Shown in pieces: positions 20,777-64,000 of a stretch of 64,000 nt of DNA. The stretch spans positions 372,001-436,000 of the forward strand of contig CATNEN010000027.1 in the NCBI GenBank assembly GCA_950097015.1, read 5' to 3'. The DNA comes from Macrostomum hystrix (Eukaryota > Animalia > Platyhelminthes). The notes under the pieces were generated by a model, which was not told the DNA's origin, did not search any database, and saw only the letters and a list, made by a program, of their open reading frames with translations. Both the position numbers and the translations under genes were made by a program. Every line of letters begins with the position of its first letter. Position 1 is the first letter of the stretch.

Positions 20777-20848
20777 GTCCGCGTAGCGTAGTGGTGAGGA
20801 CTGGCGATTTTTGACGCAGCGGTCGGGGATTAGAATCGCAGCTACGAA
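20777..20848 (+). pseudogene. Decayed tRNA-like sequence or SINE head
   Basis: TAGCGTAGTGG A-box-like motif and GGGATTAGAATC degenerate B box at tRNA-like spacing. Confidence 0.4.
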
Positions 20849-21654: not shown

Positions 21655-21890
21655 GATAAAGAGACAAGCAAACAGAGTGTGAGAGAAGGAGAGAGAGGGA
21701 GAGTGAGAGAGGGAGAGTGAGAGAGAGGGAGAGAGAGGGAGAGAGGGAGAGAGAGGGAGAGAGGGAGAGAGAGGGAGAGAGGGAGAGAGAGTGAGAGAGG
21801 GAGAGTGAGAGAGAGGGAGAGAGAGGGAGAGAGGGATCAGAGAGGGAGAGAGGGAGAGAGTGGGAGAGAGAGCGGGAGAGAGGAGAGAGG
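21655..21890. repeat. (GA)n/GGGA polypurine microsatellite
   Basis: Direct inspection. Confidence 0.95.
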
Positions 21891-21946
21891 ACACTGCCCT
21901 TTGAATTTCAAAAATCTAATGTTGGAATCGATTCCGATATGTATCG

Positions 21947-22056
21947 AAAAAATTGAAATCAGGATTCGAACCAAGGCAACTCCAGACGCGTTTCGCTCTT
22001 ATTGGAGCTCATCAGTAGAGTCTAGCCTAGCGCTCTAGCCATTAGGCTATAGGCGC
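21947..22056 (-). ncRNA. Pol III-type tRNA-like cassette carrying a type I minimal hammerhead ribozyme
   Basis: Minus strand in order: A box TAGCCTAATGG (22049-22039); stem I 5' GACTCTA; core CTGATGA (22015-22009); stem II GCTC-CAATAA-GAGC; GAAA (21994-21991); palindromic stem III ACGCGT with GUC cleavage triplet ending at 21985; stem I 3' TGGAGTT; B box GGTTCGAATCC (21972-21962); T6 terminator (21952-21947). Confidence 0.85.
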
Positions 22057-22144
22057 TTGTTCAAATCCAGCTTTCAACCTCAACATATCGTAATCGATTC
22101 GGCAGCGCCCCGCAACTCAATCCACACTCACTCAACTCCTCTCC

Positions 22145-22565
22145 GAGAGAGAGGGAGAGAGAGGGAGAGAGAGGGAGAGAGAGGGAGGGAGAGGGAGAGA
22201 GGGAGAGAGAGGGAGAGAGAGGGAGAGAGAGGGAGAAAGAGAGGGAGAGAGAGGGAGGGAGAGAGGGAGAAAGGGAGAGAGAGGGAGAAAGAGAGTGAGA
22301 GAGAGGGAGGGAGAGGGAGAGAGGGAGAGAGAGGGAGGGAGAGGGAGAGAGAGGGAGAAAGAGAGGGAGAGAGGGAGAGAGGGAGAGAGAGGGAAAGAGA
22401 GGGAGAGAGAGGGAGAGAGAGGGAGAGAGGGAGAGAGAGGGAGAGAGGGAGAGAGGGAGAGAGAGGGAAAGAGAGGGAGAGAGAGGGAGAGAGGGAGAGA
22501 GAGGGAGAGAGGGAGAGAGGGAGAGAGAGGGAGAAAGAGAGGTAGAGAGAGGGAGGGAGAAAGAG
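22145..22565. repeat. (GA)n/GGGA polypurine microsatellite
   Basis: Direct inspection. Confidence 0.95.
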
Positions 22566-23104
22566 AAATGAACAGGCTATAGTTGGTTGATATGGAGATG
22601 AGGATAAAGGAGGACGAAGCGGAAAGAGTGCTTAAGAGAGTTGCTGAGTAAATGGGAACTCAAACAAAGGTTTAAAAAGTTGGACAGGTCGTAGAAAGCG
22701 ATTAGCAATGCGAATTTTGAGGACGCTGAAAAAAACTACTTGAAAATGACATATCCGTGTCTCTCCGGAAACAAGAGCTTACTCGTAACCAGACCTCACA
22801 GACTGCAGACAGCAAAAATGTTTCGAAAACTTTTTTGATGGCTAAGTCACGTGACTGACAAAGTCCGCCCAGGATGATGAAGCGACAGACTTTGGACCCG
22901 ATCGCAAATAAATTATTAACGAAAGCCGGAAGCTGCCTCTGCTAGGAAAAATATCTAGCAGTAAAACAGCCTGGCACAATGAGATCCATTCAACTTGCTT
23001 TTGCATTCTTGCCAAGGGAAGAAAATTTCTGCTTGTAAAATTGTTCGCCTTTTCCCGATGAAGATAAGAAAGAATTTATTGACTAGCACAATGTGCCGAC
23101 TTGA

Positions 23105-23570
23105 AAAACTACTGTTCTTAGCTGTTAGATACTGTTCTCATCTGTTAGACACTGTTCTCATCTGTTAGACACTGTTCTCATCTGTTTGACACTGTTCTTA
23201 GCTGTTAGACTCTGTTCTCAGCTGTTAGACACTGTTCTCATCTGTTAGACACTGTTCTCATCTGTTTGACACTGTTCTCATCTGTTAGACACTGTTCTCA
23301 TCTGTTAGACACTGTTCTCATCTGTTAGACACTGTTCTCATCTGTTAGACTCTGTTCTCATCTGTTAGACACTGTTCTCATCTGTTAGACACTGTTCTCA
23401 TCTGTTAGACACTGTTCTCATCTGTTAGACTCTGTTCTCATCTGTTAGACTCTGTTCTCGTCTGTTAGACACTGTTCTCATCTGTTAGACTCTGTTCTCA
23501 TCTGTTAGACACTGTTCTCATCTGTTAGACTCTGTTCTCGTCTGTTAGACACTATTCTCATCTGTTCTCA
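23105..23570. repeat. Minisatellite, 20-bp unit CTGTTAGACACTGTTCTCAT (about 23 copies)
   Basis: Direct inspection. Confidence 0.95.
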
Positions 23571-24569
23571 TCTCTTGCACTTTAAGCGCCAAGTTGTTGA
23601 TTAGAATTTTGTCAAACTATCGTGTGTCTGGTTCAGGCTCTGGCCAGTCAGCATTTATCATCGGAGTCAGGATTCTCTGCCTTACTAGGCAATCCCCATA
23701 TATTGTTATACTCGTACATCTGCTTTTTAATTATTAATTAGGCTGGGGAATTGAAGCTGTCTTGAGAGAGTGAGGTTGAAAGCTGGTGCGACGTCTAAAT
23801 AAATCCCAATTCCCAGTTTTTTCCAAGACACGTGAAATCGACTCTATGGCGGTAACTAAAAACACGGCCGCCAAGACTGAGTGTGGGCTGAGCTGTCACA
23901 GCTGTCACGAATGACTGATTGGTATCTGATTGTATCCCTGTACTCTCTCCAAGTCCTCCCATGGGCTTTTTTGTTTGAGAATAAATGCTTCGCCAATACC
24001 TCCCAATGGGATAATATCCCAAGCCTTCCGAAAGCAATCCTTGTCACGGTCAATATAATGTCACGGCAGTTTGCCTGCTGCCAGTTTGGGTCACCGGTCT
24101 GTCAGCTTGGCCATTTTGATTGAGCTCATTTATCGACTCATGCTTTCCCTAGTGCTCAAAGCGAGCCACTTTTCTGGCGCGCCTTTTCACTTTTTTTTCT
24201 ACGACCCTAGCAACGGTGAGGCGGACTCTTCTCAGAATTCAATATGGGTCTGAGAAACATTGCCAACTATTTTATTGACTTATTGACTGTAAGAAAAATT
24301 GACAGGCATAAAATTTATAAATCAAGCCTTTATAAATGTAGCCCAAACTCCAGTCTTGAGGACTTTTCAGATTCAGTCACTTCAACAATGTCCAATGCAG
24401 CACAATGTAACTTAAGGCTTCAACGAGCATTTCTCTCTAAATTGTGAATTTTTTCTTTGTTGAAAAGAAATGGTGACTTTGGCAATGCAGATTTCAACGA
24501 TAGGCAAGGATACTTGCAATGATATTTGGAAATTTAAGAACTCCGGTATGAGTACAGCACAGCATTGAA

Positions 24570-26110
24570 TAACTGGATGAGTACACTATTTAATGACTGG
24601 ATGAGTACACTATTTAATGACAGGATGAGTACAGTACTGAATGACAGGATGAGTACACTATTTAATGACAGGATGAGTACACTATTTAATGACTGTATGA
24701 GTACAGTACTGAATGACTGGATGAGTACAGTACTGAATGACAGGATGAGTACACTATTTAATGACAGGATGAGTACAGTACTGAATGACAGGATGAGTAC
24801 ACTATTTAATGACAGGATGAGTACACTATTTAATGACTGTATGAGTACAGTACTGAATGACAGGATGAGTACACTATTTAATGACTGGATGAGTACACTA
24901 TTTAATGACTGGATGAGTACACTATTTAATGACAGGATGAGTACAGTACTGAATGACAGGATGAGTACACTATTTAATGACTGGATGAGTACACTATTTA
25001 ATGACTGGATGAGTACACTATTTAATGACTGGATGAGTACACTATTTAATGACAGGATGAGTACAGTACTGAATGACAGGATGAGTACAGTACTGAATGA
25101 CAGGATGAGTACACTATTTAATGACAGGATGAGTACAGTACTGAATGACAGGATGAGTACACTATTTAATGACTGGATGAGTACAGTACTGAATGACAGG
25201 ATGAGTACACTATTTAATGACTGGATGAGTACACTATTTTATGACAGGATGAGTACAGTACTGAATGACAGGATGAGTACACTATTTAATGACTGGATGA
25301 GTACACTATTTAATGACTGGATGAGTACACTATTTAATGACTGGATGAGTACACTATTTAATGACTGGATGAGTACACTATTTAATGACTGGATGAGTAC
25401 AACATTTAATGACAGGATGAGTACAGTACTGAATGACAGGATGAGTACAGTACTGAATGACAGGATGAGTACAGTACTGAATGACAGGATGAGTACACTA
25501 TTTAATGACAGGATGAGTACAGTACTGAATGACAGGATGAGTACACTATTTAATGACAGGATGAGTACAGTACTGAATGACTGCATGAGTACACTATTTA
25601 ATGACAGGATGAATACAGTACTGAATGACAGGATGAGTACAGTACTGAATGGCAGGATGAGTACACTATTTAATGACAGGATGAGTACAGTACTGAATGA
25701 CAGGATGAGTACAACATTTAATGACTGGATGAGTACACGATTTAATTACTGGATGAGTACAACATTTAATGACTGGATGAGTAAACTATTTAATGACTGG
25801 ATGAGTACAACATTTAATGACAGGATGAGTACAGTTCTGAATGACAGGATGAGCACACTATTTAATGACAGGATGAGTACATTACTGAATGACAGGATGA
25901 GTACAGTACTGAATGACAGGATGAGCACACTATTAAATGACAGGATGAGTACACTATTTAATGACAGGATGAGTACACTATTTAATGACTGGATGAGTAC
26001 ACTATTTAATGACTGGATGAGTACACTATTTAATGACTGGATGAGTACACTATTTAATGACTGGATGAGTACAACATTTAATGACAGGATGAGTACAGTT
26101 CTGAATGAAT
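24570..26110. repeat. Minisatellite, 24-bp unit with two interspersed variants (GAGTACACTATTTAATGAC(T/A)GGAT and GAGTACAGTACTGAATGACAGGAT), about 64 copies
   Basis: Direct inspection; explains ORF 24565-26244. Confidence 0.95.
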
Positions 26111-26574
26111 GGGTGAGTACCAATATCAGTATAAATGGTCACGAGGGAGTGAAAGGCGAAATGCAAAAGCAAATTTCGCAACTTCCATGTGGAAATGACG
26201 ACAGAGAAGGCAGTGCTGAGATTCAACCCTTGTTAATTAGGTGAGTTCAGCAAAGATGTGGAAACTTCCTTAATGTAGCCATCGCTAATTTTTAATCGAC
26301 TTGCGAACGAAAGCTTTGCAACATTTTGATCTGGAAATAGGACCTGAGGGGTACGATTCGGCATTCGAATTTTTCTCGCACGTATGAAGGTAAGGTGTGA
26401 TTATAAATGATGTGATTTGTGTGTGTGCGCGCGTGTGTTGGTGTGTCTGTGTGTGTCTAGCTAGCACGAATGCATTCAACGTAAAAGTAATGGGGGTGTT
26501 AAAACGGTTGGAAAATGAGCTTTAAAGTGGGTGCTGGAATGTTATTAAAAGGTTACTTATACTTAAAAATGTAT

Positions 26575-27180
26575 TAGCCGTGAGGTTGGTGCTGTAGTGG
26601 TAGGAATGAAGGTCTGGCATGAGGTGGGTGCTGGAGGGGTAGAGATAAAAGTCTGGCGTGAGGTGGGTGCTGTAGTGGTAGGAATAAAGGTCTGGCGTGA
26701 CACCGTGCTGGAGGGGTAGAGATAAAAGTCTGGGCGTGAGTTGGGCGCTGGATTGGTAGAAATAAAAGTCTGGGCGTGAGGTGGGCGCTGGATTGGTAGG
26801 AATAAAGGTCTGGCGTGACACCGTGCTGGAGGGGTAGAGATAAAAGTCTGGGCGTGAGTTGGGCGCTGGATTGGTAGAAATAAAAGTCTGGGCGTGAGGT
26901 GGGCGCTGGATTGGTAGAAATAAAAGTCTGGGCGTGAGGTGGGCGCTGGATTGGTAGAAATAAAAGTCTGGGCGTGAGGTGGGCGCTGGATAGGTAGAAA
27001 TTAAAGTCTGGGCGTGAGGTGGGTGCCGGAGGGGTAGGAATAAAAGTCTGGGGCGTGAGGTGGGTGCTGGAGGGGTAGGAATATGTCTGTGGCGTGAGGT
27101 GGGTGCTGGAGGTAGGAATCAAAAGGTCTGTGGCGTGAAGTGGTTGCTGGAGGGTAGGAAAAGGAAGGTCAGTGCAGGTT
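26575..27180. repeat. Minisatellite, about 40-bp unit GGTAGAAATAAAAGTCTGGGCGTGAGGTGGGCGCTGGATT (about 15 copies)
   Basis: Direct inspection. Confidence 0.92.
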
Positions 27181-27839
27181 TCCACGTGTCAGAGTATAAT
27201 GCTTTGAATTTAAAAGAATCGAATGCTCTCTGAATGGAGAGCTAAAAACTGAGACCTTTCAGCAATGTGGGAATTTCTTTCTCTAGGTTCTCTAGGATCA
27301 CAATCACAATTTCTTTATCCAAGAATGTAAGGAGCGCAGGAACCAATTAATTCTTGATGAAGCATCTAGGGGAAACAAAGATTTCATTACTCGTCAGTTC
27401 TTTGCCAATGGCTGCATTTGATGGCACACAATCTTGGTGTCAATCAGCTTGTTCAGGTGCAGACAGATCCGCGGAGGCAGAAAAAAGGAAGCTACAAAAC
27501 ATCGGGGCATTTTATTGCGACTCCCATTCCAGCACTAGCACAGAGTTTCGCTTCCAGTTTTTTTTTCCACTGCGGCTGCATCAAAGTGTATGCCCTTGTT
27601 GGAACACAAACAAAGGTATAGATAAAGAGACGAGAGAATTGGGAAAAATGCGAGATAATACTCGTCCAATGTGCAGACAGACCTCGAAAAATAAGGCCAA
27701 ATTCCTTGCCTTTGCATCCAAACTAGACTTTCAAAAACAGCATTCCTTGTAGCCTACAATAGTTGCCTCAGAAGCAACAGCTTGACTGGCTAGATAATAA
27801 ATTTGATGCACTATCGACATTGATGGAAGCACCAACCGC

Positions 27840-28540
27840 ACGACTAGACCATCCCGTCTAACAGCTAGACCATCCTGTCTAACAGCTAGACCATCCCGTC
27901 TAACAGCTAGACCATCCCGTCTAACAGCTAGACCATCCCGTCTAACAGCTAGACCATCCCGTCTAAAAGCTAGTATACCATCCTGTCTTACAGGTTGACC
28001 ATCCTGTCTAACAGCTAGATCATCCTGTCTAACAGCTAGACCATCCCGTCTATCAGCTAGACCATCCTTTTTAACAGCTAGACCATCCCGTCTAACAGCT
28101 AGACCATCCCGTCTAACAGCTAGACCATCCCGTCTAACAGCTAGATCATCCTGTCTAACAGCTAGATCATCCTGTCTAACAGCTAGACCATCCTGTCTAA
28201 CAGCTAGACCATCCTGTCTAACAGCTAGACCATCCTGTCTAAAAGCTAGTATACCATCCTGTCTTACAGGTTGACCATCCTGTCTAACAGCTAGATCATC
28301 CTGTCTAACAGCTAGACCATCCCGTCTATCAGCTAGACCATCCTTTTTAACAGCTAGACCATCCCGTCTAACAGCTAGACCATCCCGTCTAACAGCTAGA
28401 CCATCCCGTCTAACAGCTAGACCATCCTGTCTAACAACTGGACAATCCTGTCTAACAGCTAGACCATCCTGTCTAACAACTGGACAATCCTGTCTAACAG
28501 CTAGACCATCCTGTCTAACAACTGGACGATCCAGTCTAAC
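27840..28540. repeat. Minisatellite, 21-bp unit CTAACAGCTAGACCATCC(C/T)GT (about 33 copies)
   Basis: Direct inspection; the minus strand reads (VRRDGLA/VRQDGLA)n in ORF 27731-28906. Confidence 0.95.
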
Positions 28541-29114
28541 AAGAGGCGACTCAGGCGTATGGCAGGGTTCGTCTGTCAGTTGTGCAATAGCTGTGCTCAT
28601 CTCCTGCACTTCTTTGGCCCCAACCAACCGCGCTACTTTCTTGGAAAGGTCGATTGCCCAGACGACATGATAGTTCAGGCCCGCTTCCTTATCTGCGCCC
28701 ACCGATCTACTAAGATGAGAGCTCGGGGAGCCGTGAGAGCGAAAATCCCCGCAGGATTCATCGCCGGAATAAATGGGAGAAATAGGAGAAATGGGAGAAA
28801 TAGGATTGCTTCCTCTGCCCATGGGTCTGCTCAACCGCCCTCCGCCCTTCCCGATGGAGCAGTTTTTAGCATAGGAAAAAAGAAAAAATTTGAGGAATAT
28901 TCGCATCCCAGGGAAAGATATGGAGTGAGAGAGGCCGGACTATTGCCAGTATTCGATCTCCCAGACCCTGTCGCGATCATGCGGAAGCAGCAGCTGCGAC
29001 CATCTGTGTCGCTGTGCTAGCCGTCACAAACTTGCCAGCTCGTCCTTTCCATCAGCTAGTGTCCTAAAACAGAAAACTTTTTTAGAAAAAAAATAAAAAA
29101 GAAAAAAACTGCTT

Positions 29115-29415
29115 ACCCTGTTGCTTAGCCCAATTCTCACACCCTTTACCCCGTTGCTTAGCCCAATTCTCACACCCTTTACCCTGTTGCTTAGCCCAAT
29201 TCTCACACCCTTTACCCCGTTGCTTAGCCCAATTCTCACACCCTTTACCCCGTTGCTTAGCCCAATTCTCACACCCTTTACCCTGTTGCTTAGCCCAATT
29301 CTCACACCCTTTACCCTGTTGCTTAGCCCAATTCTCACACCCTTTACCCTGTTGCTTAGCCCAATTCTCACACCCTTTACCCCGTTGCTTAGCCCAATTC
29401 TCACACCCTTTACCC
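29115..29415. repeat. Minisatellite, 33-bp unit GTTGCTTAGCCCAATTCTCACACCCTTTACCC(T/C) (about 9 copies)
   Basis: Direct inspection. Confidence 0.95.
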
Positions 29416-29879
29416 TTCAATTCAATCACCACTCACTCTCTCCTCATCCATATTCCCTATCCTTTTTTACATCATTCACCCTTGTCACAAACTCCATTTA
29501 TACTCACCTTTCCCGTCTCCCAAGGTCTCCCAACGGGATATAGAAGTTGTCAAATATTTGATACCGGGCCAGCCATATCTGGATACAAATGGGATGTGAA
29601 AATGTGCCTTCAAGCGGCTGTGTGGTCGGCCAAACGGTCACACCACAAAACTGATTCTGAGGTTGTTGCTGGATGATGAAAGGCCAAACCGGCTGTTTGC
29701 TAGCTGTCAACTGGGGATTTCTAGCGTCCAACCGAAGCAGAGGGTTATCCCATATTATTTCGTGACGTCGGTTTTTCATTCGCATGTTATTGCCTGCCCA
29801 TCAAACTTCGATAACTGCCAGAAATTAGAAAAGTGTAGGGAATTCATTACAATACTGACAATTCTGAGCTCCTATGTAC

Positions 29880-30620
29880 TCTCTCCTTCCACTCTCTCCT
29901 TCCACTCTCTCCTTCCACTCTCTCCTTCCACTCTCTCTTTCCACTCTCTCTATCCACTCTCTCTATCCACTCTCTCCTTCCACTCTCTCCTTCCACTCTC
30001 TCCTTCCACTCTCTCCTTCCACTCTCTCCTTCCAATTTCTCCTTCCACTCTTTCCTTCCACTCTCTCCTTCCACTCTCTCCTTCCACTCTCTCCTTCCAC
30101 TCTCTCCTTCCACTCTCTCCTTCCACTCTCTCCTTCCACTCTCTCCTTCCACTCTCTCCTTCCACTCTCTCCTTTCCACTCTCTATATCCACTCTCTCTA
30201 TCCACTCTCTCTATCCACTCTCTCTATCCACTCTCTCTATCCACTCTCTCTATCCACTATCTCTATCCACTATCTCTATCCACTATCTCTATCCACTCTC
30301 TCTATCCACTCTCTCTATCCACTATCTCTATCCACTATCTCTATCCACTATCTCTATCCACTCTCTCTATCCACTCTCTCTATCCACTCTCTCTATCCAC
30401 TCTCTCTATCCACTCTCTCTTTCCACTCTCTCCTTTCCACTCTCTATATCCGCTATCTCTATCCACTGTCTCTATCCACTCTCTATATCCGCTATCTCTA
30501 TCCACTATCTCTATCCACTCTCTCTATCCACTCTCTCTATCCACTCTCTCTATCCACTCTCTATATCCGCTATCTCTATCCACTATCTCTATCCACTCTC
30601 TCTATTCACGCTCTCTCTCT
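29880..30620. repeat. Polypyrimidine minisatellite, 13-bp unit grading from CCACTCTCTCCTT to CCACTCTCTCTAT
   Basis: Direct inspection. Confidence 0.93.
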
Positions 30621-31364
30621 TTCAGTTAAAATTCCCGGAGGAATGTTTATAGAAAGCAAAGCTATTCTTAATTCTTGAAAATTTCCATCCCATTCGCATT
30701 AAAGAATTGAAATCCCATTGCAATAAGCCTCACAGGCCTCGCTATGCTCTCGGAGTAAACAGTTGCGCAAAATAATCCCAATCCCTATAATAATGCTAAT
30801 AGCAAGGAGCAGCAATCTCAACTGATTGCTTCTCTTCTTATTCTTCTTCACAGGAGAAGATTTGGCAATGCGATGAAAGATGAAGCGTTTTGATTGCATC
30901 AGGCAATTTTATTAATTCGCTCATTCACTTGAGGCCCAACATTTTTCGGCCCAAAAGTCACGCAGAAACTTTCTTTTATCGTCACAAATTTATTCACGAT
31001 AATCTCCTAGTCGAGCCAGTCAATGTGTGGAGATAAAAAAGCAGTTTTTTTCAAGAGAAAAATTTCGACAAAGAACTTATCATTTATAATGAGTATTTGG
31101 GGTCTAGGAGGTGGGAAGAGGAGGGACAACTCTGGGAAGACACGGGAGTCTGGCGCGAATGCACCAGAGTGAGATATGCTAAATTGCATTTTGCACCACG
31201 GTGTAATATGTATTACATAGGAGACACTGCGGTCATGCAGTCAAAGGCATCTGACTCCAGTTGCTGATGCGAAAACTAATTAGTAAGCCTGTCCTGTCAC
31301 TGGTCACATTCTTTTCGTTTTGCTTCTCGTTTTTTCTTTCGCTTTTCCTTCCTTCTTGCTAACC

Positions 31365-34320
31365 TTCTCATCCCCTCCCTCTAACATTCTCATCCCATCC
31401 CTCTAACCTTCTCATCCCCTCCCTCTAACCTTCTCATCCCATCGCTCTAACCTTCTCATCCCCTCCCTCTAACCTTCTCATCCCATCGCTCTAACCTTCT
31501 CATCCCATCCCTCTAACCTTCTCATCACATCCCTCTAACCTTCTCATCCCATCCCTCTAACCTTCTCATCCCCTCCCTCTAACCTTCTCATCCCATCGCT
31601 CTAACCTTCTCATCCCCTCCCTCTAACCTTCTCATCCCCTCCCTCTAACCTTCTCATCCCCTCCCTCTAACCTTCTCATCCCATCGCTCTAACCTTCTCA
31701 TCCCATCCCTCTAACCTTCTCATCACATCCCTCTAACCTTCTCATCCCATCCCTCTAACCTTCTCATCCCCTCCCTCTAACCTTCTCATCCCATCGCTCT
31801 AACCTTCTCATCCCCTCCCTCTAACCTTCTCATCCCATCCCTCTAACCTTTTTATCCCCTCCCTCTAACCTTCTCATCCCATCCCTCCAACCTTCTCATC
31901 CCATCCCTCTAACCTTCTCATCCCATCCCTCTAACCTTTTTATCCCCTCCCTCTAACCTTCTCATCCCATCCCTCTAACATTCTCATCCCCTCCCTCTAA
32001 CCTTCTCATCCCATCCCTCTAACCTTTTTATCCCCTCCCTCTAACCTTCTCATCCCATCCCTCTAACCTTCTCAACCCATCCCTCTAACCTTCTCATCCC
32101 ATCCCTCCAACCTTCTCATCCCATCCCTCTAACATTCTCATCCCCTCCCTCTAACCTTCTCATCCCATCGCTCTAACCTTCTCATCCTATCCCTCTAACC
32201 TTCTCAACCCATCCCTCTAACCTTCTCATCCCATCCCTCCAACCTTCTCATCCCCTCCCTCTAACCTTCTCATCCCATCGCTCTAACCTTCTCATCCTAT
32301 CCCTCTAACCTTCTCATCCCCTCCCTCTAACCTTCTCATCCCATCCCTCTAACCTTCTCATCCCCTCCCTCTAACCTTCTCATCCCATCCCTCTAATCTT
32401 CTCATCCCATCCCTCTAACCTTCTCATCCCCTCCCTCTAACCTTCTCATCCCATCCCTCTAACCTTCTCATCCCATCCCTCTAACCTTCTCATCCCCTCC
32501 CTCTAACCTTCTCATCCCCTCCCTCTAACCTTCTCATCCCATCCCTCTAACCTTCTCATCCCCTCCCTCTAACCTTCTCATCCCATCGCTCTAACCTTCT
32601 CATCCTATCCCTCTAACCTTCTCATCCCCTCCCTCTAACCTTCTCATCCCCTCCCTCTAACCTTCTCATCCCATCCCTCTAACCTTTTTATCCCCTCCCT
32701 CTAACCTTCTCATCCCATCCCTCTAACCTTCTCATCCCCTCCCTCTAACCTTCTCATCCCATCCCTCCAACCTTCTCATCCCATCCCTCTAACCTTCTCA
32801 TCCCATCCCTCTAACATTTTTATCCCACCCACTAACCTTCTCATCCCATCCCTCTAACCTTCTCATCCCATCCCTCTAACCTTCTCATCCCATCCCTCTA
32901 ATCTTCTCATCCCATCCCTCTAACCTTCTCATCCCATCCCTCTAACCTTCTCATCCCATCCCTCTAACCTTCTCATCCCATCCCTCCAACCTTCTCATCC
33001 CATCCCTCTAACCTTCTCATCCCATCCCTCTAACCTTCTCATCCCATCCCTCTAATCTTCTCATCCCATCCCTCTAACCTTCTCATCCCATCCCTCTAAC
33101 CTTCTCATCCCATCCCTCTAACCTTCTCATCCCATCCCTCTAACCTTCTCATCCCATCCCTCCAACCTTCTCATCCCATCCCTCTAACCTTCTCATCCCA
33201 TCCCTCTAACCTTTTTATCCCTCCCTCTAACCTTCTCATCCCATCCCTCTAACCTTCTCAACCCATCCCTCTAACCTTCTCATCCCATCCCTCCAACCTT
33301 CTCATCCCATCTCTCTAACATTCTCATCCCCTCCCTCTAACCTTCTCATCCCATCGCTCTAACCTTCTCATCCCATCCCTCTAATCTTCTCATCCCATCC
33401 CTCTAACCTTCTCATCCCATCCCTCTAACCTTCTCATCCCATCCCTCTAACCTTCTCATCCCATCCCTCTAACCTTCTCATCCCATCCCTCTAACCTTTT
33501 TATTCCCTCCCTCTGACCTTCTCATCCCATCGCTCTAACCTTCTCATCCTATCCCTCTAACCTTCTCATCCCCTCCCTCTAACCTTCTCATCCCATCCCT
33601 CTAACCTTCTCATCCCCTCCCTCTAACCTTCTCATCCCATCCCTCTAACCTTCTCATCCCATCCCTCTAACCTTTTTATTCCCTCCCTCTGACCTTCTCA
33701 TCCCATCGCTCTAACCTTCTCATCCCATCCCTCTAATCTTCTCATCCCATCCCTCTAACCTTCTCATCCCATCCCTCTAACCTTCTCATCCCATCCCTCT
33801 AACCTTCTCATCCCATCCCTCTAACCTTCTCATCCCATCCCTCTAACCTTCTCATCCCCTCCCTCTAACCTTCTCATCCCATCCCTCCAACCTTCTCATC
33901 CCATCCCTCTAACCTTCTCATCCCATCCCTCTAACCTTTTTATTCCCTCCCTCTGACCTTCTCATCCCCTCCCTCTAACCTTCTCATCCCATCCCTCTAA
34001 CCTTCTCATCCCCTCCCTCTAACCTTCTCATCCCATCCCTCTAATCTTCTCATCCCATCCCTCTAACCTTCTCATCCCCTCCCTCTAACCTTCTCATCCC
34101 ATCCCTCTAACCTTCTCATCCCATCCCTCTAACCTTCTCATCCCCTCCCTCTAACCTTCTCATCCCCTCCCTCTAACCTTCTCATCCCATCCCTCTAACC
34201 TTCTCATCCCCTCCCTCTAACCTTCTCATCCCATCGCTCTAACCTTCTCATCCTATCCCTCTAATCTTCTCATCCCCTCCCTCTAACCTTCTCATCCCAT
34301 CCCTCTAACCTTCTCATCCT
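31365..34320. repeat. Large minisatellite, 22-bp unit CTCTAACCTTCTCATCCC(A/C)TCC (about 134 copies, 3 kb)
   Basis: Direct inspection. Confidence 0.97.
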
Positions 34321-48800: not shown

Positions 48801-51800
48801 GCATCCGGCCGGAACAGGTGCAGCCGGGCGAAGTATTTATAGCGCGCATCGTCAGAGGTGAGGTTCAGAACATGCAACCGATTGATTCCGGGTCCGAAGA
48901 TGGCGTATTTTAGGTTTTCTGCGGCTGCAACACGAAATATATGCACTTTTTGAATAGACAAGCTGCGCGTCTGCTTTAGGCTAGTGCATCGTTTTAGTCA
49001 TTTCGGACTATTAACGTCCTCAAATACTTCGAAGCTTCCTCAAAGGCACTACCTAACGCTCTCATAGACTTTAAAACGTCGTGGCTGTAATAACAAATAA
49101 TAAAAGTCCTCACAGGTTATTAAATCAAAAGTAATAAAACTCACCATGTAATCAAGAAACTTCAAACTGCTACAAAACTGCTCACACTACCAAACGTCCT
49201 CCAACACTACCAAACGTACTCACACACTACCAAACGTACTCACACACTACCAAACGTCCTCCAACACTACCAAACGTTCTCACACACTACCAACGTCCTC
49301 TCACACTAGCAAACGTCCTCCGACACTACCAAACGTCCTCTGACAGTATAAGAACGTCCTCCGACACTACCAAACGTCCTCTGACACTATCAAACGTCCT
49401 TCGACACTATCAAACGTCCTCCCACACTACCAAATGTCCTCCCACACTACCAAACGTCCTCCGACACTATCAAACGTCCTCCGACACTACCAAATGTCCT
49501 CTGACACTATCAAACGTCCTTCGACACTATCAAACGTCCTCCGACACTACCAAACGTCCTGCGACACTACCAAACGTCCTCTGACACTATCAAACGTCCT
49601 TCGACACTATCAAACGTCCTCCCACACTACCAAATGTCCTCCCACACTACCAAACGTCCTCCGACACTATCAAACGTCCTCCGACACTACCAAATGTCCT
49701 CTGACACTATCAAACGTCCTTCGACACTATCAAACGTCCTCCGACACTACCAAACGTCCTGCGACACTACCAAACGTCCTCTGACACTATCAAACGTCCT
49801 CCAACACTACCAAACGTTCTCACACACAACCAAATGTCCTCCGACATTTTGTCCTGTCTCACCAAACGTCCTCCAAGGCTACCAAATGTCTTCCCACACT
49901 AGCAAACGTCCTCCGACACTATCAAAGATCCTCCCAAGCTAGCTACCAAACGTCTTCACAGACTACTACGATAACGTTCTTCTAATAAAAGTGCTAACAT
50001 CTTCCCAGGCTACCAAACACTTGTCTCGCCAGCAGTCCCAGCAATTTCAAGTGACATCAGCTTACAAATCTGCTGCGGGCTTTCATGCGACGCCAAATTC
50101 ATTCGATAATAGGAGACTTGTAGCGCATCGGGCGAATTTGACAAGATTCGCAGGTTGCAGACCGCTGTGCCACCACGCGGTCCAGATTCGCAGTCGATGC
50201 TGCCATCAATGGCGGTCAGATTCACTGGCAGAGTAGTGTGTGCGAAAGATGTAGATGTCGAGAAGGGGAAGGGACGAAGGATGGGTCCTTGGTGAAAATG
50301 TAATGTTGAAAAGTCAAGACGAAATAAAGTTTATCAGCAAAGTCGCCTGTGCTCACCAAATCGTGGCATAAACCTTCTGGACTGAATCACGAGGCCGGTG
50401 CCATCAGCTGACTCTGACTGGCAGTACAGTCGGCACTGTTGATTCCGATCATCAGACAACGTTGAAATTTTTTCCGGCTCAGCAGTCACAGTCAGCCGAC
50501 CGTCCCCAGCGTCGAATATACGGACAAATGGCGACCTGTTGGGCAGAGCCGACAGCTTCGGCAGGTCGCTCTCGTGGCCGTCGGCGGGACTGCAGCCCTC
50601 GTAGCGCCAGCGCAGGCGTTGGGTCGAAAACGACATCGGGGCGCAAAGCCGGACCTCATTCGAAGGCATTGCCAGAACCTGATCTGGCAACGGCTCCAAC
50701 GCGAAGTTGCGATCTGACGGTGCTCGAACTTCTATCGCCATGGCAACCACTGCGTTATGCGAATTATGCAAATGGCGACATAAACAGATTAACAGTCAGG
50801 CTTTTATTGGTTTATTTTGTTGACGATCTGTCTCACAGTCCTCTGTCTCACCTGTCTCACAGTCATCTGTCTCACAGTCATCTGTCTCACAGTCATCTGT
50901 CTCACAGTCATCTGTCTCACAGTCATCTGTCTCACAGTCATCTGTCTCACAGTCATCTGTCTCACAGTCATCTGTCTCACAGTCATCTGTCTCACAGTCA
51001 TCTGTCTCACAGTCATCTGTCTCACAGTCATCTGTCTCACAGTCATCTGTCTCACAGTCATCTGTCTCACAGTCATCTGTCTCACAGTCATCTGTCTCAC
51101 AGTCATCTGTCTCACAGTCATCTGTCTCACAGTCATCTGTCTCACAGTCATCTGTCTCACAGTCATCTGTCTCACAGTCATCTGTCTCACAGTCATCTGT
51201 CTCACAGTCATCTGTCTCACAGTCATCTGTCTCACAGTCATCTGTCTCACAGTCATCTGTCTCACAGTCATCTGTCTCACAGTCATCTGTCTCACAGTCA
51301 TCTGTCTCACAGTCATCTGTCTCACAGTCATCTGTCTCACAGTCATCTGTCTCACAGTCATCTGTCTCACAGTCATCTGTCTCACAGTCATCTGTCTCAC
51401 AGTCATCTGTCTCACAGTCATCTGTCACACCTGTCTCACAGTCAAGTTTCATAGTTAATAAAATTGGATTATACCACATCGGTTTTTGAAGTGTAATAAA
51501 AGAGCAACGTGAAATTAGATTGATCAGACCAGCCAGTTGCTTAGTCATACACTGGCCTGGTAGTTGATAGTTTGGAGTTACGATCTAACAGATTTCAAAT
51601 CGACAATGCGCATATTGCATATAGCTAGTGTACAGAGCGTGCACTTACACTAATAATCAGCATTCACAACCCTGGGGGAGGACAGGCCAATCTAAATATA
51701 GAAATGACGTCAGTCCCATTCAGCCCGCCATACGAAAGCGGGTATGCGTCACTTAGTCATGCACTGAACTATATTTGACAAGAGAGAAGAGAGGAGGAAC

Positions 51801-58942: not shown

Positions 58943-59022
58943 GTCTGAATAATATTCCCTTTTACATCCAAATAAACACTGGGAGCACTCAATTTAACAC
59001 CAAGTGGCAGAACGCATGCGCT

Positions 59023-59638
59023 TTTTCTTTCTTTCTTTTACAGGGCGCGCCCGAGCCGGAGAACCGATAAGGGCGGGGGCGCTAGAGGCGCCCCATACTG
59101 CGCAGGAGCTCGATGACCGCGGCCGGGTTCTCCATCAAGTTCTCGGCCGGGATTCCGCGTAGGGCTCGGTGGCGGTCGCCTCTTGGGCAGTGGAGGACGA
59201 CGTGGTCGACACTGTCCAACTCGCCGCAGTCGGGGCACAGCGGGGACTCGTCGACGCCGAGACGGTAGCGGGTTTTTCTGTCGATCATGCTGGCGCCCGC
59301 GCGTAGTTGGTTGACCAGGACCTGTTGCTTCCGCGGCAGGCCCTGGGGCGGGCTCCAGAAAGGGCCGACTGCTGTGGTATCCAGGTCGCGTCGGCAGCGT
59401 CGGGCGGCTGCTCTGGCGGCGTCCAACTGGATCGGGGCCTGGCTTTGGTCTAGGTTTGCCGCCCTGGCCGCCGCCTGGTCGGCGGCCTCGTTGCCGGAAA
59501 TACCGCAGTGGGCCGGGACCCAGCAGAAGCCGATCTTGGTGCCTAGCTCGATCAGGTCCAGGATGAGCTCCCAGCAATCGGCTGCTACTGAGTCCCTCTG
59601 CCCAAGTGGCCCGGCGCTCAGGGTCGTGATGGCGCTCA
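59023..59638 (-). mobile_element. 5'-truncated non-LTR retrotransposon (I-group-like): RNase H C-half, CCHC knuckle, 3' UTR and (GAAA)n tail; 12-bp TSD AGCGCATGCGTT
   Basis: WVPAHCGISGNEAADQAA (LINE RNase H), QLRAG, CPDCGELDSVDHVVLHC, stop at 59082. TSD copies at 59011-59022 and 59639-59650. Confidence 0.9.
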
Positions 59639-59650
59639 AACGCATGCGCT

Positions 59651-59770
59651 TCTTCTTCTTCTGTTTCAGGGCGCCTCCGTGTGCGGACCAGCCGATCGGG
59701 AGGGGGGCAGAGGAGGGGGGCCCCATTCTGCGGATGAGCCCGATAATGGCATCCGGGGACCCCATCAGGT
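59651..59770 (-). mobile_element. Second, 120-bp 3' fragment of a related LINE with (AAG)n tail; 10-bp TSD AGCGCATGCG
   Basis: Encodes DLMGSPDAIIGLIRRMG, homologous to NLMENPAAVIELLRSMG of the neighbour. Both end GCGCCCTG(T)AAA plus a purine tail. TSD copies at 59641-59650 and 59771-59780. Confidence 0.8.
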
Positions 59771-59895
59771 CGCATGCGCTGCAGTCGCTGCTGCATCATG
59801 TCTGTGGCCAAAAGTGTGGTAAACGAGCAGCCAATTTAACACTCGGGGCACCAATTTCGTCCTTTTGATTTGCGCTGCTTAAAATCTCACTGCCA

Positions 59896-60906
59896 TGAGC
59901 GATCAGGAACTTCTATCTGATTCTATCAAGCCGCCAAAGCTACGAAACTGCTCCAGATGAACAGGCAGATGGACTGCGCCGAGGAACGTACGTTAGAATA
60001 AGCGATGAGCGGTACAACCTCGTTGTGGATGCTTAGAAAGAGGCGAGCGACCGGCTGATATCGCGCGCTGGCTGCAGCTCAACAAAAACACCGTCTACTC
60101 CATTCAGAAGCGATACGAGACGACAGGACAGCGAAATCGGCGTCCGCGTGGTGGAACTCGCGGCGCAAAGCTGGGCGAGGAACAGACAGAGTGGCTGGTG
60201 CAACATCTTGACTGGAACCAAATGATGACGCTGGCAGAGATGGCACGATCGGTACAAGGTAGATTTGAAGGTCTTCCAGTGAGCACTGCTACAATCAGTC
60301 GAGCTTTAGACAAGCAGCTTATCACCTTGAAATGTCTGAGCCGGGATGCCGACATTCCTGCAGCGCGCAATACTCCAGAGAATCGACTTCGAAGGCGCGA
60401 ATTCGCTCAATGGCTGATCGAATTGCCACCCTATCATCACCCTGTCTTCTTCGATGAAACAGGTTTTAATTTATGGACTCGAATGTCACAAGGGCGCAGC
60501 AGACGTGGGCAACGAGTGAGAAGGGTCGTTGTCGCTCAGCGAGGGGTGCAGGTGAATCTGGTACAGGCCGTGTCACCAACGGCAGGTCTTCTGCATAACA
60601 AGATTGTAGCAGTCACGATGACCGCAGAAAGATTTCAGACAGTTGTGGATGAGTTACTGGAGGTTGTAAGCAATCGGAACAACATCGGAGACGCTGACCA
60701 GATGCACATTGTGATGTGATGCCAGCCTGAAGTGTAGAGACCTGCCACCTCTGGACACTCCCCTGTGGCAGAGGCGGATTCTGGTGCTGCACAGGATTGC
60801 AGAGGAGGCCACTGGTGAGGTGACTCCTGCCAAATGCGGCGGCTGGTTCAGGCAGATGCTGCGACGAGTTCCGGTCTGCTTGGCAGGGCAGCCGATTGAT
60901 GACTGA
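59896..60906 (+). pseudogene. IS630/Tc1/mariner-superfamily transposase pseudogene
   Basis: HTH region (ADIARWLQLNKNTVYSI...RPRGG), VSTATISRAL, first Asp in VFFDETGF, second-Asp motif broken (IVM*), YSP.LNPIE region deleted, and C-terminal EEATGEVTPAKCGGWFRQM. Contains stops and frameshifts. Confidence 0.85.
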
Positions 60907-61567: not shown

Positions 61568-62340
61568 GCTCAAACTGAGGGATGTGGCCAAGGCTCGCAC
61601 AGCAGTGCAGAAAGGCTCGGATGGACAACTCACCCGCTTGATACTTCGCCCAGCAGGTCTCGACTCCTGTCTGCAGCTGCTCATACCGTGCTCGGTGCTA
61701 AAGCTCTTGCGCTCTTGTGCCTCCGTGTACAGCAGGTGGACGAGCAGATAGAGTCAGCTGCACTCTCTCGGCTCGCTGCTCGAGTCGCCGATAGCCTTCG
61801 ACCTCGTTGTTGATCCGGATGGACTGACACTGACTTCCAGGACTGCATGGACCGGATTCGACAGCTAATAAAAAGAGAGATAACACTAAACTAAAGAAGT
61901 CCAAAAATGGAAATATATGACTAGATAGGCATGCCTTGAAATGCAAATAGGAAAGTATTCAGTTAAATATTTAAAATGATTAGTTGCTAATACTGATCAA
62001 ATTCATAAATAGCTTTGAAAATCAAGTTATTTATCTTCATTCCGTTTACTTAGACAAACATTGAATTTGAAATTATTTTTATTTTAAATTGTTTATATAG
62101 ATCTAAATTACGCAAAATTATCAATAGGCCTAGTTGAATTTTCAAGTCAAAATGTATACTGTGAAAAAATTATGGAATAAAACCATTTATCCTTATTTGC
62201 CCAAAGAAATATACAATGCCTCAAGTAGAGTCGATAAAATTATATCACGATTTCTTATTACTAATGTAGCAGGCCCCTTTTAACTGTCCATTTATACCCT
62301 CCTTTTATAGCCGTCACTTTATGTCTATGATTCATGCCCG

Positions 62341-62627
62341 TTTTTACACCTGCCCCAAATGAACCAGTTGCGCAGCCGACAGCACAGCCGCAGCTATTGC
62401 ACGTCGCATCTGAAGGCTGTGTACGGCTGTTCAGTCCATGGACTGGAAGACGCCACACCCACCCTCAATTACCCCAGCTGATGCTGGTACCCATTTATCA
62501 GCTGGGTGAACTGAAGCAATGCAGAGTTAAGTGTCTTGCTAAAATATGAAAAATGGTTCCAGTGGAGTCGGGAATCGAACCCCGACCTTCGAGTCGTGAG
62601 TCTGACGCCCTAACCTGCACTAGGCAA
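62341..62627 (-). mobile_element. Full-length copy of the tRNA-derived SINE
   Basis: Minus strand GCCTAGTGCAGGTTAGGGCGTCAGACTCACGACTCGAAGGTCGGGGTTCGATTCCCGACTCCACTGG, plus body and 3' GGGGCAGGTGTAAAAA, colinear with 7515-7800. Confidence 0.88.
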
Positions 62628-63664
62628 CAACCACCTCGTTCTTCAATAATAAGAATTTTTGACAGATGTTTCCCCGAATCTGTCCCTGCCTCTTAAAATG
62701 CGTCGAACATTAACATGCACGTACATAGTACTCCTTTGCACTGAGCAGGGAAGCATTATCCAACTTCTCTCGACGAGAGCTGATATTTTTAACACTTAGA
62801 GTTTCTGAAAATTAGCATTTGTTTATCTTATTGCATTTGCTTCTTAAAGTAGTTGTCGACACACAAGTCTAAATGACGACGTTCATGTTGGCACAAAATT
62901 TCCAAGAAACTATACGCGTTAGCAATTGACTAATAATTTCTAATGCCGCGTTCACTTGCCTGCGTATATTTAATTCTGTACAAGTGGTCTCCAGCATCCA
63001 GGTGACGTGTGGGAATCTGCAAGTCACGTCACTATTCCAATCTCCATGAAGTCGTCGTACATCCTTCAATGTTACAGTTCTGAGTTGTTTTCGTCCTTGT
63101 TGCGGGTAAAAAGCGCTTAAAAACTCACAAATATACTATTTACACACTTCGATATGACAGCTTATTAAATTTCGCTGAATGTTGTCATAGTTTTTAGGCT
63201 ACTTTATGGTTCTAAAATATGAACTAGTCATTGTGAAATGACTTTATTTAGGTAATATACACAAATCAATAAAAAACGGTCGATGCAGTAAATTATTTTA
63301 GTAAATTACTGCTTCTCTACTGTTACGTCACGTCTTATGAAGCATGCCTAGAACTCTAATGCCTCACTATTACACAATAGAATGGAATCTCTATCTTTAA
63401 GCATTTCTCAAGGTCAAGCAACAGATAGCAGGTCATCACACTATTCATTTTCACTAAGTAAGTTAAGACACAAATTCCTTTAATCTTGACTCATCTCACA
63501 CAATGAACCTAATTGTAGGAGCTACTCTACCTCAGTGTCAAGAGAACGCGGCTTGAATAGGAAAAGGAAAGCAGCAGCGGGTCGCTCTGCTGTGCAGCAT
63601 GTGAGACCAGCTTTCAAAGGCTCGATGAATTTCCATGACCGGAAAAACGTGTCGATTTGGAGTG

Positions 63665-63670
63665 TATAAA
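63665..63670 (+). promoter_or_regulatory. TATA box of the prepro-peptide gene
   Basis: TATAAA about 95 nt upstream of ATG 63764 at the AT-rich to GC-rich transition. Confidence 0.55.
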
Positions 63671-63763
63671 TTCGAGTCATCTCGATGCTGGGTGGACCTA
63701 CAAGCCAAGTGCAGCTCTCAGCTTCTCAACCTGCTTCATCAAGCGACAAACAGCGACACAAGC

Positions 63764-64000
63764 ATGAAGTGGCAGTTTGCTCTCGGACTCCTGCTCTGCG
63801 CAGCCCTGGCAGCCGCCAGACCCAGCCAGGAGATGTCGGAGGAAGACGCGGAGTCGCTGCAGGCCCTTGAGGCCCTGGCTGACCTGGACGAGTCGGAATT
63901 GACAGCGGAGAAGGCCGCGGAGCTGCAGAAGAAGTGGCGAATCCGGTGGAAGCGTGTGTGGCGCGTGGCCAAGTCGGTCTACAGGGTCTACCGCATGCTG
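63764..64000 (+). CDS. Partial (runs off window) prepro-peptide: signal peptide, acidic pro-piece, cationic Trp/Arg-rich amphipathic peptide; putative antimicrobial peptide precursor
   Basis: Hand translation: MKWQFALGLLLCAALAAA|RPSQEMSEEDAESLQALEALADLDESELTAEKAAELQ|KKWRIRWKRVWRVAKSVYRVYRML. AGCATGA start context, upstream TATA, GC-rich codons. Missing from the ORF track because it has no stop in the window. Confidence 0.8.
   Translation, partial: MKWQFALGLLLCAALAAARPSQEMSEEDAESLQALEALADLDESELTAEKAAELQKKWRIRWKRVWRVAKSVYRVYRML

What the first reader, a model, noticed from the sequence alone, without database searches (positions are those of the whole stretch)
63764..64000. Unannotated antimicrobial-peptide-like precursor at the window edge
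Seen: an 18-aa signal peptide ending AAA; a pro-segment of about 37 aa with 12 Asp/Glu; then KK followed by WRIRWKRVWRVAKSVYRVYRML (10 Lys/Arg in the last 24 aa, 3 Trp, no acidic residue). Hydrophobic residues (W5, V8, W9, A12, V15, Y16, Y19, L22) and basic residues fall on opposite faces of a helix. Established: an anionic pro-piece neutralising a cationic C-terminal peptide is the design of Hydra arminins and mammalian defensin precursors. Inference: a new linear, membrane-active host-defence peptide, possibly one of a lineage-specific family. I recognise no named family.
Basis: partly seen in the sequence, partly recalled or inferred. Interest (0 to 1): 0.85.

Follow-up and report, generated by a model that had tools for sequence, protein, structure and literature searches.

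The report
Flatworm cationic peptide precursor gene
The window's last 360 bases hold the promoter and most of a small, transcribed gene from a large, undescribed Macrostomum flatworm family of secreted precursors built like frog and Hydra antimicrobial peptide precursors, but antimicrobial activity is untested and the only published staining of a relative is in the gonads.

Summary

It is a real gene. RNA contigs match it exactly from 63724 onward, while the 1.7 kb upstream is silent. It belongs to a family of at least 23 protein clusters in M. lignano, all annotated "hypothetical". A profile search of 1.84 billion proteins found no member outside Macrostomum.

Members share a promoter module (GGAAAAACGTG, 13 nt, TATAAAT), a signal peptide and an acidic pro-piece. 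Their C-terminal peptides differ widely: 6-34 aa, charge +2 to +16, and 20 of 27 end in Gly or Gly plus basic residues, an amidation signal. dN in the peptide part is 2-4 times that in the pro-piece.

This is the evolutionary pattern of frog and Hydra host-defence peptide families, but there is no sequence homology to them. Function is inferred only.

A published in situ probe that covers a whole M. lignano paralog stains "gonads". Positional RNA-seq finds the same transcript equally in head-only fragments.

The scan found this family before on other DNA (s1-253527 and others). No paper describing the family was found.

The parts
63640..63651 (+). Conserved upstream promoter element CGGAAAAACGTG; the factor that binds it is unknown
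   Evidence: Invariant in the window and in four M. lignano paralogs. Kept as GGAAA[AC]ACG[TA]G in distant subfamilies whose flanks no longer align and in L008. It occurs once in the window against 0 expected. In loci L001-L003 all 8 exact copies lie just upstream of family copies.
63665..63671 (+). TATA box TATAAAT, 13 nt downstream of the conserved element
   Evidence: ATAAAT is invariant in all aligned family promoters. It forms the end of the 32-nt pattern match.
63697..63763 (+). Inferred 5' UTR; the transcription start is not mapped, and 63697 is only TATA plus about 30 nt
   Evidence: An RNA contig of run X1 matches exactly from 63724, and X1 has no coverage of 62001-63675. The block CAGCTTCTCA..GCTTCATCA is conserved among paralogs.
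63764..63817 (+). Signal peptide, 18 codons, predicted cleavage AAA|RP
   Evidence: It is the most conserved part of the family, with mean pairwise identity 0.77 and no indels; dN is 0-0.075.
63818..63928 (+). Acidic pro-piece, 37 codons, net charge -10
   Evidence: dN is 0.03-0.17 with dN/dS 0.17-0.44. Across the family its charge tracks the charge of the peptide (r = -0.88).
63929..63934 (+). Lys-Lys, the predicted prohormone-convertase cleavage site
   Evidence: Both Lys are invariant in the subfamily alignment, and the second Lys is nearly invariant family-wide. That it is cleaved is inferred.
63935..64000 (+). First 22 codons of the cationic Trp/Arg/Tyr/Val-rich peptide (+8); the ORF runs off the window
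Evidence: An X1 contig continues 16 nt past the window end.

Best explanation
Window 63640-64000 holds the compact promoter, the 5' UTR and 79 of about 84 codons of an intronless gene in a Macrostomum species other than M. lignano. The gene encodes a secreted prepropeptide of a genus-restricted multigene family. The proposed mechanism follows. Signal peptidase cuts after AAA. In the secretory pathway the -10 pro-piece neutralises the +8 peptide. A convertase cuts after KK. If the unseen 3' end carries Gly plus a basic residue, as in all intact paralogs of this subfamily, a carboxypeptidase and the amidating enzyme then leave a peptide amide of about 24-26 aa. That peptide is a very basic, Trp/Arg-rich amphipathic molecule: beta-type alternation in the first half and a helical pattern in the second. 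It most likely acts on anionic membranes, as a host-defence or cytolytic peptide. Shown here: the gene, its transcription, family membership, the conserved cassette with a variable payload, and charge balance. Inferred: every processing step, secretion, and the membrane or antimicrobial action. The structural part I hold at about 0.95; the confidence given below is for the functional claim.
For: Gene and family: homologs at 65-72% identity; a wider family of 10 representative clusters and 23 clusters at 90% identity, all from M. lignano except one Logan contig. Paralogs form tandem clusters with pseudogenes. Transcription: X1 contigs match exactly over 63724-64000 and beyond, while the upstream 1.7 kb is silent in the same run. 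Design: pro-piece charge -5 to -14 against peptide charge +2 to +16, r = -0.88. KK is conserved. 20 of 27 members end in G or G[KR]. Evolution typical of defence or toxin payloads: identity is 0.77 in the signal, 0.45 in the pro-piece and 0.31 in the peptide, with 48% one-sided gaps in the peptide. dN in the peptide is 0.16-0.36 against 0.03-0.17 in the pro-piece at similar dS. Payloads range from Pro/Arg repeats and a two-Cys form to 6-10-mer alternating amides. Language-model features place a paralog nearest to frog bombinin, temporin, brevinin and dermaseptin precursors, at scores of 0.70-0.77, which is a lead only. Long-type paralogs share a local motif, W-R-x-R...R-[VI]-R-W-R-[KR]-V, with Hydra arminin 1a-C (z 2.3-3.5; arminin sequence from PMC6217004). 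Hydra antimicrobial peptide families are likewise taxon-restricted, tandemly expanded and highly expressed (PMC10945409).
Against: No activity data exist. The only in situ datum for a paralog is 'gonads', not gut or epidermis. Positional RNA-seq of that paralog shows about 100 reads and no regional enrichment, so that copy is neither abundant nor clearly tissue-restricted. The peptide contains internal KR and RR pairs that a convertase might also cut. The helical moment of the whole peptide is only marginal (p 0.05). The AlphaFold model is of low confidence (pLDDT 60). The window peptide's own likeness to arminin is not significant (p 0.2). The very high read depth in X2-X4 covers only the family-wide cassette (63743-63876) and falls to zero over 63944-64000, so it says nothing about this particular gene. 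dN/dS in the peptide part is mostly below 1.
Confidence: 0.5

Rival explanations
1. It is a reproductive peptide. The subfamily is made in testis and ovary and acts on gametes, on eggshell or egg envelope, or on the mating partner. Its rapid evolution would then be driven by sexual selection rather than by microbes.
For: The in situ probe RNA815_1838.3 is listed with pattern 'gonads' (source Ramm et al. 2019) in Table S11 of PMC7336406. Its primers match L001:9977-10000 and 10320-10340 exactly, giving 364 bp across the whole coding sequence of an intact paralog. Fast divergence and gene turnover also fit reproductive proteins.
Against: The same transcript has equal relative abundance in head-only fragments that lack gonads: 93, 94, 49 and 176 reads, class 0,0,0. 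Gonad expression does not exclude host defence; Hydra periculins are germline antimicrobial peptides (PMC10945409). The probe would cross-hybridise among paralogs. The datum comes from another species and from a paralog, not from this gene.
Confidence: 0.2
2. It is a neuropeptide or hormone-like signalling precursor. Dibasic cleavage and C-terminal amidation yield a ligand for a receptor.
For: A KK site and a G or G[KR] ending are the hallmarks of amidated neuropeptide precursors. Some short members would end in ...VRF-amide or ...FRL-amide. The paralog transcript is present in head fragments.
Against: The conservation pattern is the reverse of that in neuropeptide precursors: the signal and spacer are conserved while the predicted ligand is hypervariable in length, sequence and charge. 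Charges of +8 to +16 and lengths of 22-34 aa are unusual for flatworm neuropeptides (own knowledge). There are dozens of paralogs with pseudogenes. The one in situ pattern is gonads, not nervous system.
Confidence: 0.08
3. It is a structural or polyanion-binding peptide. The polycation condenses or cross-links acidic polymers such as mucus, glycosaminoglycans, eggshell or granule matrix, or self-assembles, rather than killing cells.
For: Charge density is extreme, at 36-47% Arg/Lys. Strictly alternating hydrophobic and Arg sequences in the short members and in the N-terminal half are a design known to favour beta-sheet assembly (own knowledge).
Against: A structural role would not predict so much diversity among payloads behind one cassette. 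No repeat or cross-linking residues are conserved. Nothing tested here links the family to a secretion product.
Confidence: 0.1
4. It is not a functional gene: a chance ORF or a decaying copy.
For: The family does contain pseudogenes and truncated copies (L001 16757-17007, 26086-26354, 33432 and 35075). The 3' end of this copy was not seen.
Against: The frame is intact over all 79 codons and the promoter module is intact. Exactly matching RNA contigs exist. dN/dS is well below 1 in the signal and pro parts against the M. lignano copies.
Confidence: 0.02

Closest known systems
Hydra arminins (for example arminin 1a; C-terminal 31-mer active against bacteria)
   Same: Signal peptide, anionic N-terminal part and a strongly cationic C-terminal peptide, here +8 to +16 against +13 for arminin 1a-C, with an amidated end (PMC6217004). 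Both are taxon-restricted, tandemly duplicated gene families (PMC10945409). Long-type paralogs share a local W-R-x-R...R-V-R-W-R-K-V motif with arminin 1a-C.
   Different: No detectable homology: the profile search returned no cnidarian protein, and the window's own peptide is not more arminin-like than its shuffles (p 0.2). Arminins are made in endodermal epithelium, whereas the one localisation here is gonads. No activity has been shown here.
Amphibian skin peptide precursors (preprodermaseptin / FSAP family, Pfam PF03032; bombinins PF05298)
   Same: A conserved signal plus acidic pro-piece, a dibasic site, then a hypervariable cationic peptide, often with a Gly amidation donor. One conserved cassette carries many unrelated payloads. 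These are the nearest named clusters by language-model features.
   Different: No Pfam match even at E 10. The site is KK, not KR. The genes here are intronless. The conserved unit extends into the promoter. Payloads are far more Arg-rich.
Cathelicidins (for example indolicidin, tritrpticin, PR-39)
   Same: A conserved pro-region with a hypervariable C-terminal cationic peptide, in Trp/Arg-rich, Pro/Arg-rich and helical types, which parallels the spread seen (the comparison is from my own knowledge).
   Different: There is no cathelin domain. The pro-piece here is a short acidic stretch without cysteines. No homology was found.
Amidated neuropeptide precursors of flatworms (FMRFamide-like peptides, NPF)
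   Same: A signal peptide, basic cleavage sites and a C-terminal Gly for amidation.
   Different: The predicted peptide is the least conserved part instead of the most conserved. There is a single peptide per precursor, of very high charge.

Membership tests
Macrostomum 'MKWQ-cassette' prepropeptide family (undescribed; M. lignano hypothetical proteins such as BOX15_Mlig001477g4, Mlig030644g1, Mlig025003g1) | Signal peptide M-[KR]-W-Q-[FLI]-[AV]-L-G-L-L-L-C | tested here: met
   The window protein has MKWQFALGLLLC. L7, G8, L9-L11 and C12 are invariant in 17 aligned members.
Macrostomum 'MKWQ-cassette' prepropeptide family | Acidic pro-piece that ends in a basic site (usually KK) directly before a cationic C-terminal peptide | tested here: met
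   Pro-piece charge -10, then KK, then a +8 peptide. The same layout is seen in all members.
Macrostomum 'MKWQ-cassette' prepropeptide family | Promoter module GGAAA[AC]ACG[TA]G, a spacer, then [CT]ATAAAT, about 95-120 nt upstream of the ATG | tested here: met
   Window 63640-63671, aligned with six loci from four subfamilies and with L008.
Macrostomum 'MKWQ-cassette' prepropeptide family | Intronless ORF of 62-95 aa, usually ending in Gly or Gly plus Lys/Arg | tested here: inconclusive
   The window ends at codon 79. Paralogs meet the feature. Note s1-085010 reports a 255-letter gene ending in an amide signal, which was not checked here.
Hydra arminins | Sequence homology to arminin precursors | tested here: not met
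   A profile search of 1.84 billion representatives gave only Macrostomum hits plus one spurious bacterial repeat protein. Local peptide similarity reaches z 2.3-3.5 for paralogs and p 0.2 for this gene.
Hydra arminins | Bactericidal activity of the released C-terminal peptide | not testable with these tools
   This needs a synthetic peptide and MIC assays.
Frog skin active peptide precursors (Pfam PF03032 FSAP_sig_propep) | Match to the PF03032 signal and pro-peptide model | tested here: not met
   No hit at E up to 10 for the window protein, or at E up to 1 for six paralogs. Only language-model feature similarity of 0.70-0.74 was found.
Frog skin active peptide precursors (Pfam PF03032 FSAP_sig_propep) | Conserved prepro-region joined to a hypervariable mature peptide | tested here: met
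   Identity 0.77, 0.45 and 0.31 for signal, pro-piece and peptide; dN is 2-4 times higher in the peptide. This is a likeness of evolutionary mode, not of membership.
Amidated neuropeptide precursors | The bioactive peptide is the conserved part across paralogs and species | tested here: not met
   The peptide is the most variable part.
Amidated neuropeptide precursors | Neuronal or endocrine expression | not tested
   The only datum is a paralog's in situ pattern of 'gonads' in M. lignano, and equal abundance in head fragments.

The most novel reading that the evidence does not exclude
Macrostomum flatworms carry a genus-specific gene cassette (promoter, signal peptide and acidic pro-piece) that has been duplicated dozens of times, each copy with a different cationic amidated payload. 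On this reading it is a convergent counterpart of frog preprodermaseptins and Hydra arminins, and the first gene-encoded antimicrobial peptide arsenal described in free-living flatworms. The Trp/Arg-rich subfamility found here would be deployed in the gonads to protect germ cells, sperm or eggs. The short members would be natural versions of the alternating (hydrophobic-Arg)n amide peptides so far known mainly as synthetic designs.
Probability: 0.35. Interest if true: 0.7.

Novelty: new member of a known kind. Interest (0 to 1): 0.5.

Why it matters
In the two immunity papers read here, effector molecules of flatworm immunity are poorly defined. The 2021 planarian review (PMC7958881) names no flatworm antimicrobial peptide family. 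A 2026 paper (PMC13135979) still calls the antibacterial mechanisms incompletely defined.

A large, highly transcribed, lineage-specific family with the evolutionary pattern of host-defence peptides would fill that gap. M. lignano offers RNAi and transgenesis (PMC7053086 and PMC11075559 abstracts), so the family's function can be tested there.

The compact conserved promoter could also serve as a cell-type-specific driver. The natural peptide series, from 6-mers to 34-mers, gives a ready set for structure-activity work.

If the gonad localisation holds, the family also bears on how hermaphrodites protect gametes, or compete through them.

Tried and rejected
- Pfam gave nothing meaningful for the window protein or for six paralogs. 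The Lock_Gag1-like hit on P0019 is a 17-residue chance match on a duplicated pro-piece.
- A PDB sequence search with the 22-mer found nothing.
- Full-text searches found no paper on Macrostomum antimicrobial peptides, on ten gene IDs, or on four sequence strings from the family.
- Supplement searches of PMC5946080, PMC12896417, PMC12801592 and PMC10786194 gave nothing, or no supplement files are held. Ramm et al. 2019 itself is not held.
- A second family copy in the window: tblastn and the promoter pattern each find only this one.
- Recovering the 3' end from reads: the X1 contig runs 16 nt past the window end, but its letters are not reported.
- The idea that the pro-piece is an amphipathic helix pairing with the peptide: its hydrophobic moment is no higher than that of shuffles (p 0.5).
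- The AlphaFold model of a paralog has pLDDT 60 and pTM 0.26. It predicts helices only and was not good enough for fold searches.
- Homology to arminins is rejected.
- The window is not M. lignano itself. A Band 7 protein in the window is only 82% identical to its best M. lignano match, and shared repeats are 83-88% identical, so the window comes from another Macrostomum species.
- The opposite-strand ORF 63739-63972 is rejected, because all homology and the promoter lie on the + strand.

Full report
**What is in the sequence**

Window 63764-64000 on the + strand translates without a stop into 79 residues.
- an 18-residue signal peptide ending AAA, followed by RP;
- a 37-residue pro-piece with 12 acidic and 2 basic residues;
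- KK;
- a 22-residue stretch with 8 Arg/Lys, 3 Trp and no acidic residue, which runs off the window.

A TATAAAT box lies at 63665-63671, 93 nt upstream of the ATG.

**It is a real, transcribed gene**

A word-index protein search gave four Macrostomum lignano "hypothetical proteins" at 65-72% identity over the whole fragment.

In run X1 (labelled RNA, with some doubt), assembled contigs match the window exactly over 63724-63804, 63775-63840 and 63811-64000. The last of these continues 16 nt beyond the window. The same run has no coverage of the 1.7 kb upstream, which serves as an internal control against DNA carry-over. Other X1 contigs differ at 3-7 positions or diverge inside the pro-piece, so several paralogs are expressed in that organism.

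Against M. lignano copies, dN/dS is 0.1-0.4 in the signal and pro parts.

**Species**

A Band 7 (stomatin-type) ORF at 17840-19135 is only 82% identical to its best M. lignano match. Shared repeats are 83-88% identical. The window therefore comes from a Macrostomum species other than M. lignano. The caveat is that the best match could be a paralog.

**The family**

Intact M. lignano relatives are intronless ORFs of 62-95 aa. Locus L001 (Mlig_3_7 contig NIVC01001664.1) holds a 27-kb cluster: three intact copies, two decayed copies with a stop codon or frameshift, and two truncated copies. Two public gene models, P0001 and the 634-aa "Sushi domain" protein P0005, are chimeras that fuse a family copy to other exons.

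A profile of seven members was searched with HMMER against 1.84 billion representative proteins. It returned ten real hits and one spurious bacterial repeat protein. Nine of the ten are from M. lignano and one is from a Logan contig of unknown species. A second word-index search with a 17-member alignment listed 23 clusters, again all from M. lignano apart from that contig. Only one copy lies in this window.

**One cassette, many payloads**

All members share the signal peptide M[KR]WQ[FLI][AV]LGLLLC and an acidic pro-piece that ends in a basic site. What follows differs widely:
- Trp/Arg-rich peptides of 18-34 aa, which is the window's subfamily;
- a Pro/Arg repeat peptide;
- a two-Cys peptide;
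- a Lys/Ala-rich form;
- many 6-10-mers of strictly alternating hydrophobic and Arg/His residues ending in Gly.

Twenty of 27 members end in Gly or Gly plus Lys/Arg (plus P0012).

Mean pairwise identity falls from 0.77 in the signal to 0.45 in the pro-piece and 0.31 in the peptide. One-sided gaps rise from 0 to 48%. Within the window's subfamily, dN is 0.16-0.36 in the peptide, 0.03-0.17 in the pro-piece and 0-0.075 in the signal, at similar dS. dN/dS in the peptide is 0.35-1.1.

The negative charge of the pro-piece tracks the positive charge of the peptide: r = -0.88 over 20 distinct types. These types are related to one another, so this figure is descriptive only.

**The promoter belongs to the cassette**

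The 12-mer CGGAAAAACGTG lies 13 nt upstream of TATAAAT in the window and in its close paralogs. The form GGAAA[AC]ACG[TA]G plus [CT]ATAAAT persists in distant subfamilies whose flanks no longer align, and in the Logan contig. In loci L001-L003, all eight exact copies of the 12-mer lie just upstream of family copies. The window has one match against zero expected. Which factor binds the element is unknown.

**Shape of the peptide**

The helical hydrophobic moment of the 22-mer is 0.58 (z 1.85, p 0.05 against shuffles). Its second half peaks at 105 degrees, which is helical. Its first half peaks at 180 degrees, which is strand-like alternation. The paralogs behave the same way.

AlphaFold2 on a paralog predicts helices at low confidence (pLDDT 60). 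The pro-piece is not amphipathic.

**Expression data from the literature**

Table S11 of Brand et al. 2020 (PMC7336406) lists in situ probe RNA815_1838.3 with pattern "gonads". It gives Ramm et al. 2019 as the source and maps the probe to Mlig001477.g4. I checked the primers. They match L001:9977-10000 and 10320-10340 exactly. That gives the stated 364 bp and spans the entire coding sequence of an intact paralog, which is 68% identical in protein to the window's gene.

In the positional RNA-seq of Arbore et al. 2015 (PMC4490696), the same transcript has 93, 94, 49 and 176 reads in the head-only, plus-testis, plus-ovary and whole-worm samples. Its class is 0,0,0, meaning no regional enrichment and presence in tissue without gonads.

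The two data sets disagree, and both concern a paralog in another species. Ramm et al. 2019 is not held in the library.

The very high depth in runs X2-X4 (10^4-10^5) covers only 63743-63876, the family-wide cassette. It drops to zero over 63944-64000. It shows that the family as a whole is abundant in those runs, whose kind is unknown, and says nothing about this gene.

**Comparison with known systems**

No Pfam family matches and no PDB sequence matches.

The architecture and the mode of evolution are those of frog skin peptide precursors, cathelicidins and Hydra arminins. Language-model features put a paralog nearest to bombinin, temporin, brevinin and dermaseptin precursor clusters, at scores of 0.70-0.77, which the tool rates as a lead only.

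Arminin 1a-C (31 aa, +13, amidated; Table 1 of PMC6217004) shares a W-R-x-R...R-V-R-W-R-K-V motif with the long paralogs, at z 2.3-3.5 over composition-matched shuffles. It does not share it with the window's own peptide (p 0.2). The profile search found no cnidarian protein. I read this as convergence.

Hydra antimicrobial peptide families are likewise genus-restricted, tandemly expanded and highly transcribed, and one of them (periculin) is germline-expressed (PMC10945409).

**Interpretation**

The structural reading is secure: a secreted prepropeptide gene of a Macrostomum-specific cassette family.

The functional reading rests on design and evolutionary pattern only. The inverse conservation pattern argues against a receptor ligand. 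The gonad in situ result keeps a reproductive role open, and it is also compatible with germline or egg defence. I put the membrane-active host-defence reading at about 0.5.

**Novelty**

I found no paper that describes the family, although one paralog was used as an in situ probe. The two flatworm immunity papers I read name no flatworm antimicrobial peptide family.

The scan itself has met this family before on other DNA of this genome. The follow-up of s1-253527 reached the same picture of a shared cassette and promoter. Notes s1-253531, s1-085011 and s1-328864 look like further members. Note s1-085010 is this same gene read from the next window.

Noticed in passing
window 62369-62583 (also 7588-7769 and 1544-1670; L001:41736-41923): A dispersed repeat of about 200 nt, 83-88% identical between copies and to M. 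lignano. It is present in hundreds of contigs of runs X2-X4 at summed depths in the thousands, with many different joints. It is probably a short, abundant, transcribed mobile element.
   Followed up: partly
window 63357-63700: The non-transcribed promoter and upstream region of this gene, silent in X1, is covered in X2 and X3 by single contigs of depth 614 and 2408. These are about 94% alike and carry a 7-nt deletion at 63608. Either a paralog in that organism has a longer 5' end or read-through, or those runs of unknown kind contain DNA. This is unexplained.
   Followed up: no
window 17840-19135 (+): An uninterrupted 431-aa ORF with a Band 7/SPFH (stomatin or MEC-2 type) domain, 82% identical to M. 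lignano Mlig013819g1. I used it here only to judge the species.
   Followed up: partly
window 50462-51454 (both strands carry long ORFs): An ORF scores strongly as bacterial-type pentapeptide repeats (Pfam E 2.8e-34). Since overlapping ORFs lie on both strands, it is probably a translated tandem repeat rather than a gene.
   Followed up: no
window 20000-34000: A long stretch with extreme strand asymmetry: GC skew +0.2 to +0.27, then -0.3 to -0.98. An ORF at 24565-26244 hits several unrelated coiled or repeat Pfam models. It looks like satellite or low-complexity DNA.
   Followed up: no
L001 (M. lignano NIVC01001664.1), locus coordinates 9905-37330: The public gene model Mlig001477g4 (P0001) spans 27 kb and fuses the start of one family copy to another whole copy. 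UniProt A0A1I8JEL3 (P0005, 'Sushi domain') ends in a family copy. Two truncated copies, at 33432 and 35075, run into a TGTD/RHRQAQ-coding microsatellite.
   Followed up: partly
window 59011-59868 and 60198-60719: By eye, ORFs resembling a reverse-transcriptase/RNase H tail and a Tc1/mariner-type transposase. These are mobile-element debris just upstream of the peptide gene. I did not check them with a profile search.
   Followed up: no
L008:370-425 (Logan contig of SRR31628392): The promoter element occurs twice in tandem (CCGGAAAAATGTG, then AGGAAAAACGTG) in front of the member that carries the Pro/Arg repeat payload.
   Followed up: no
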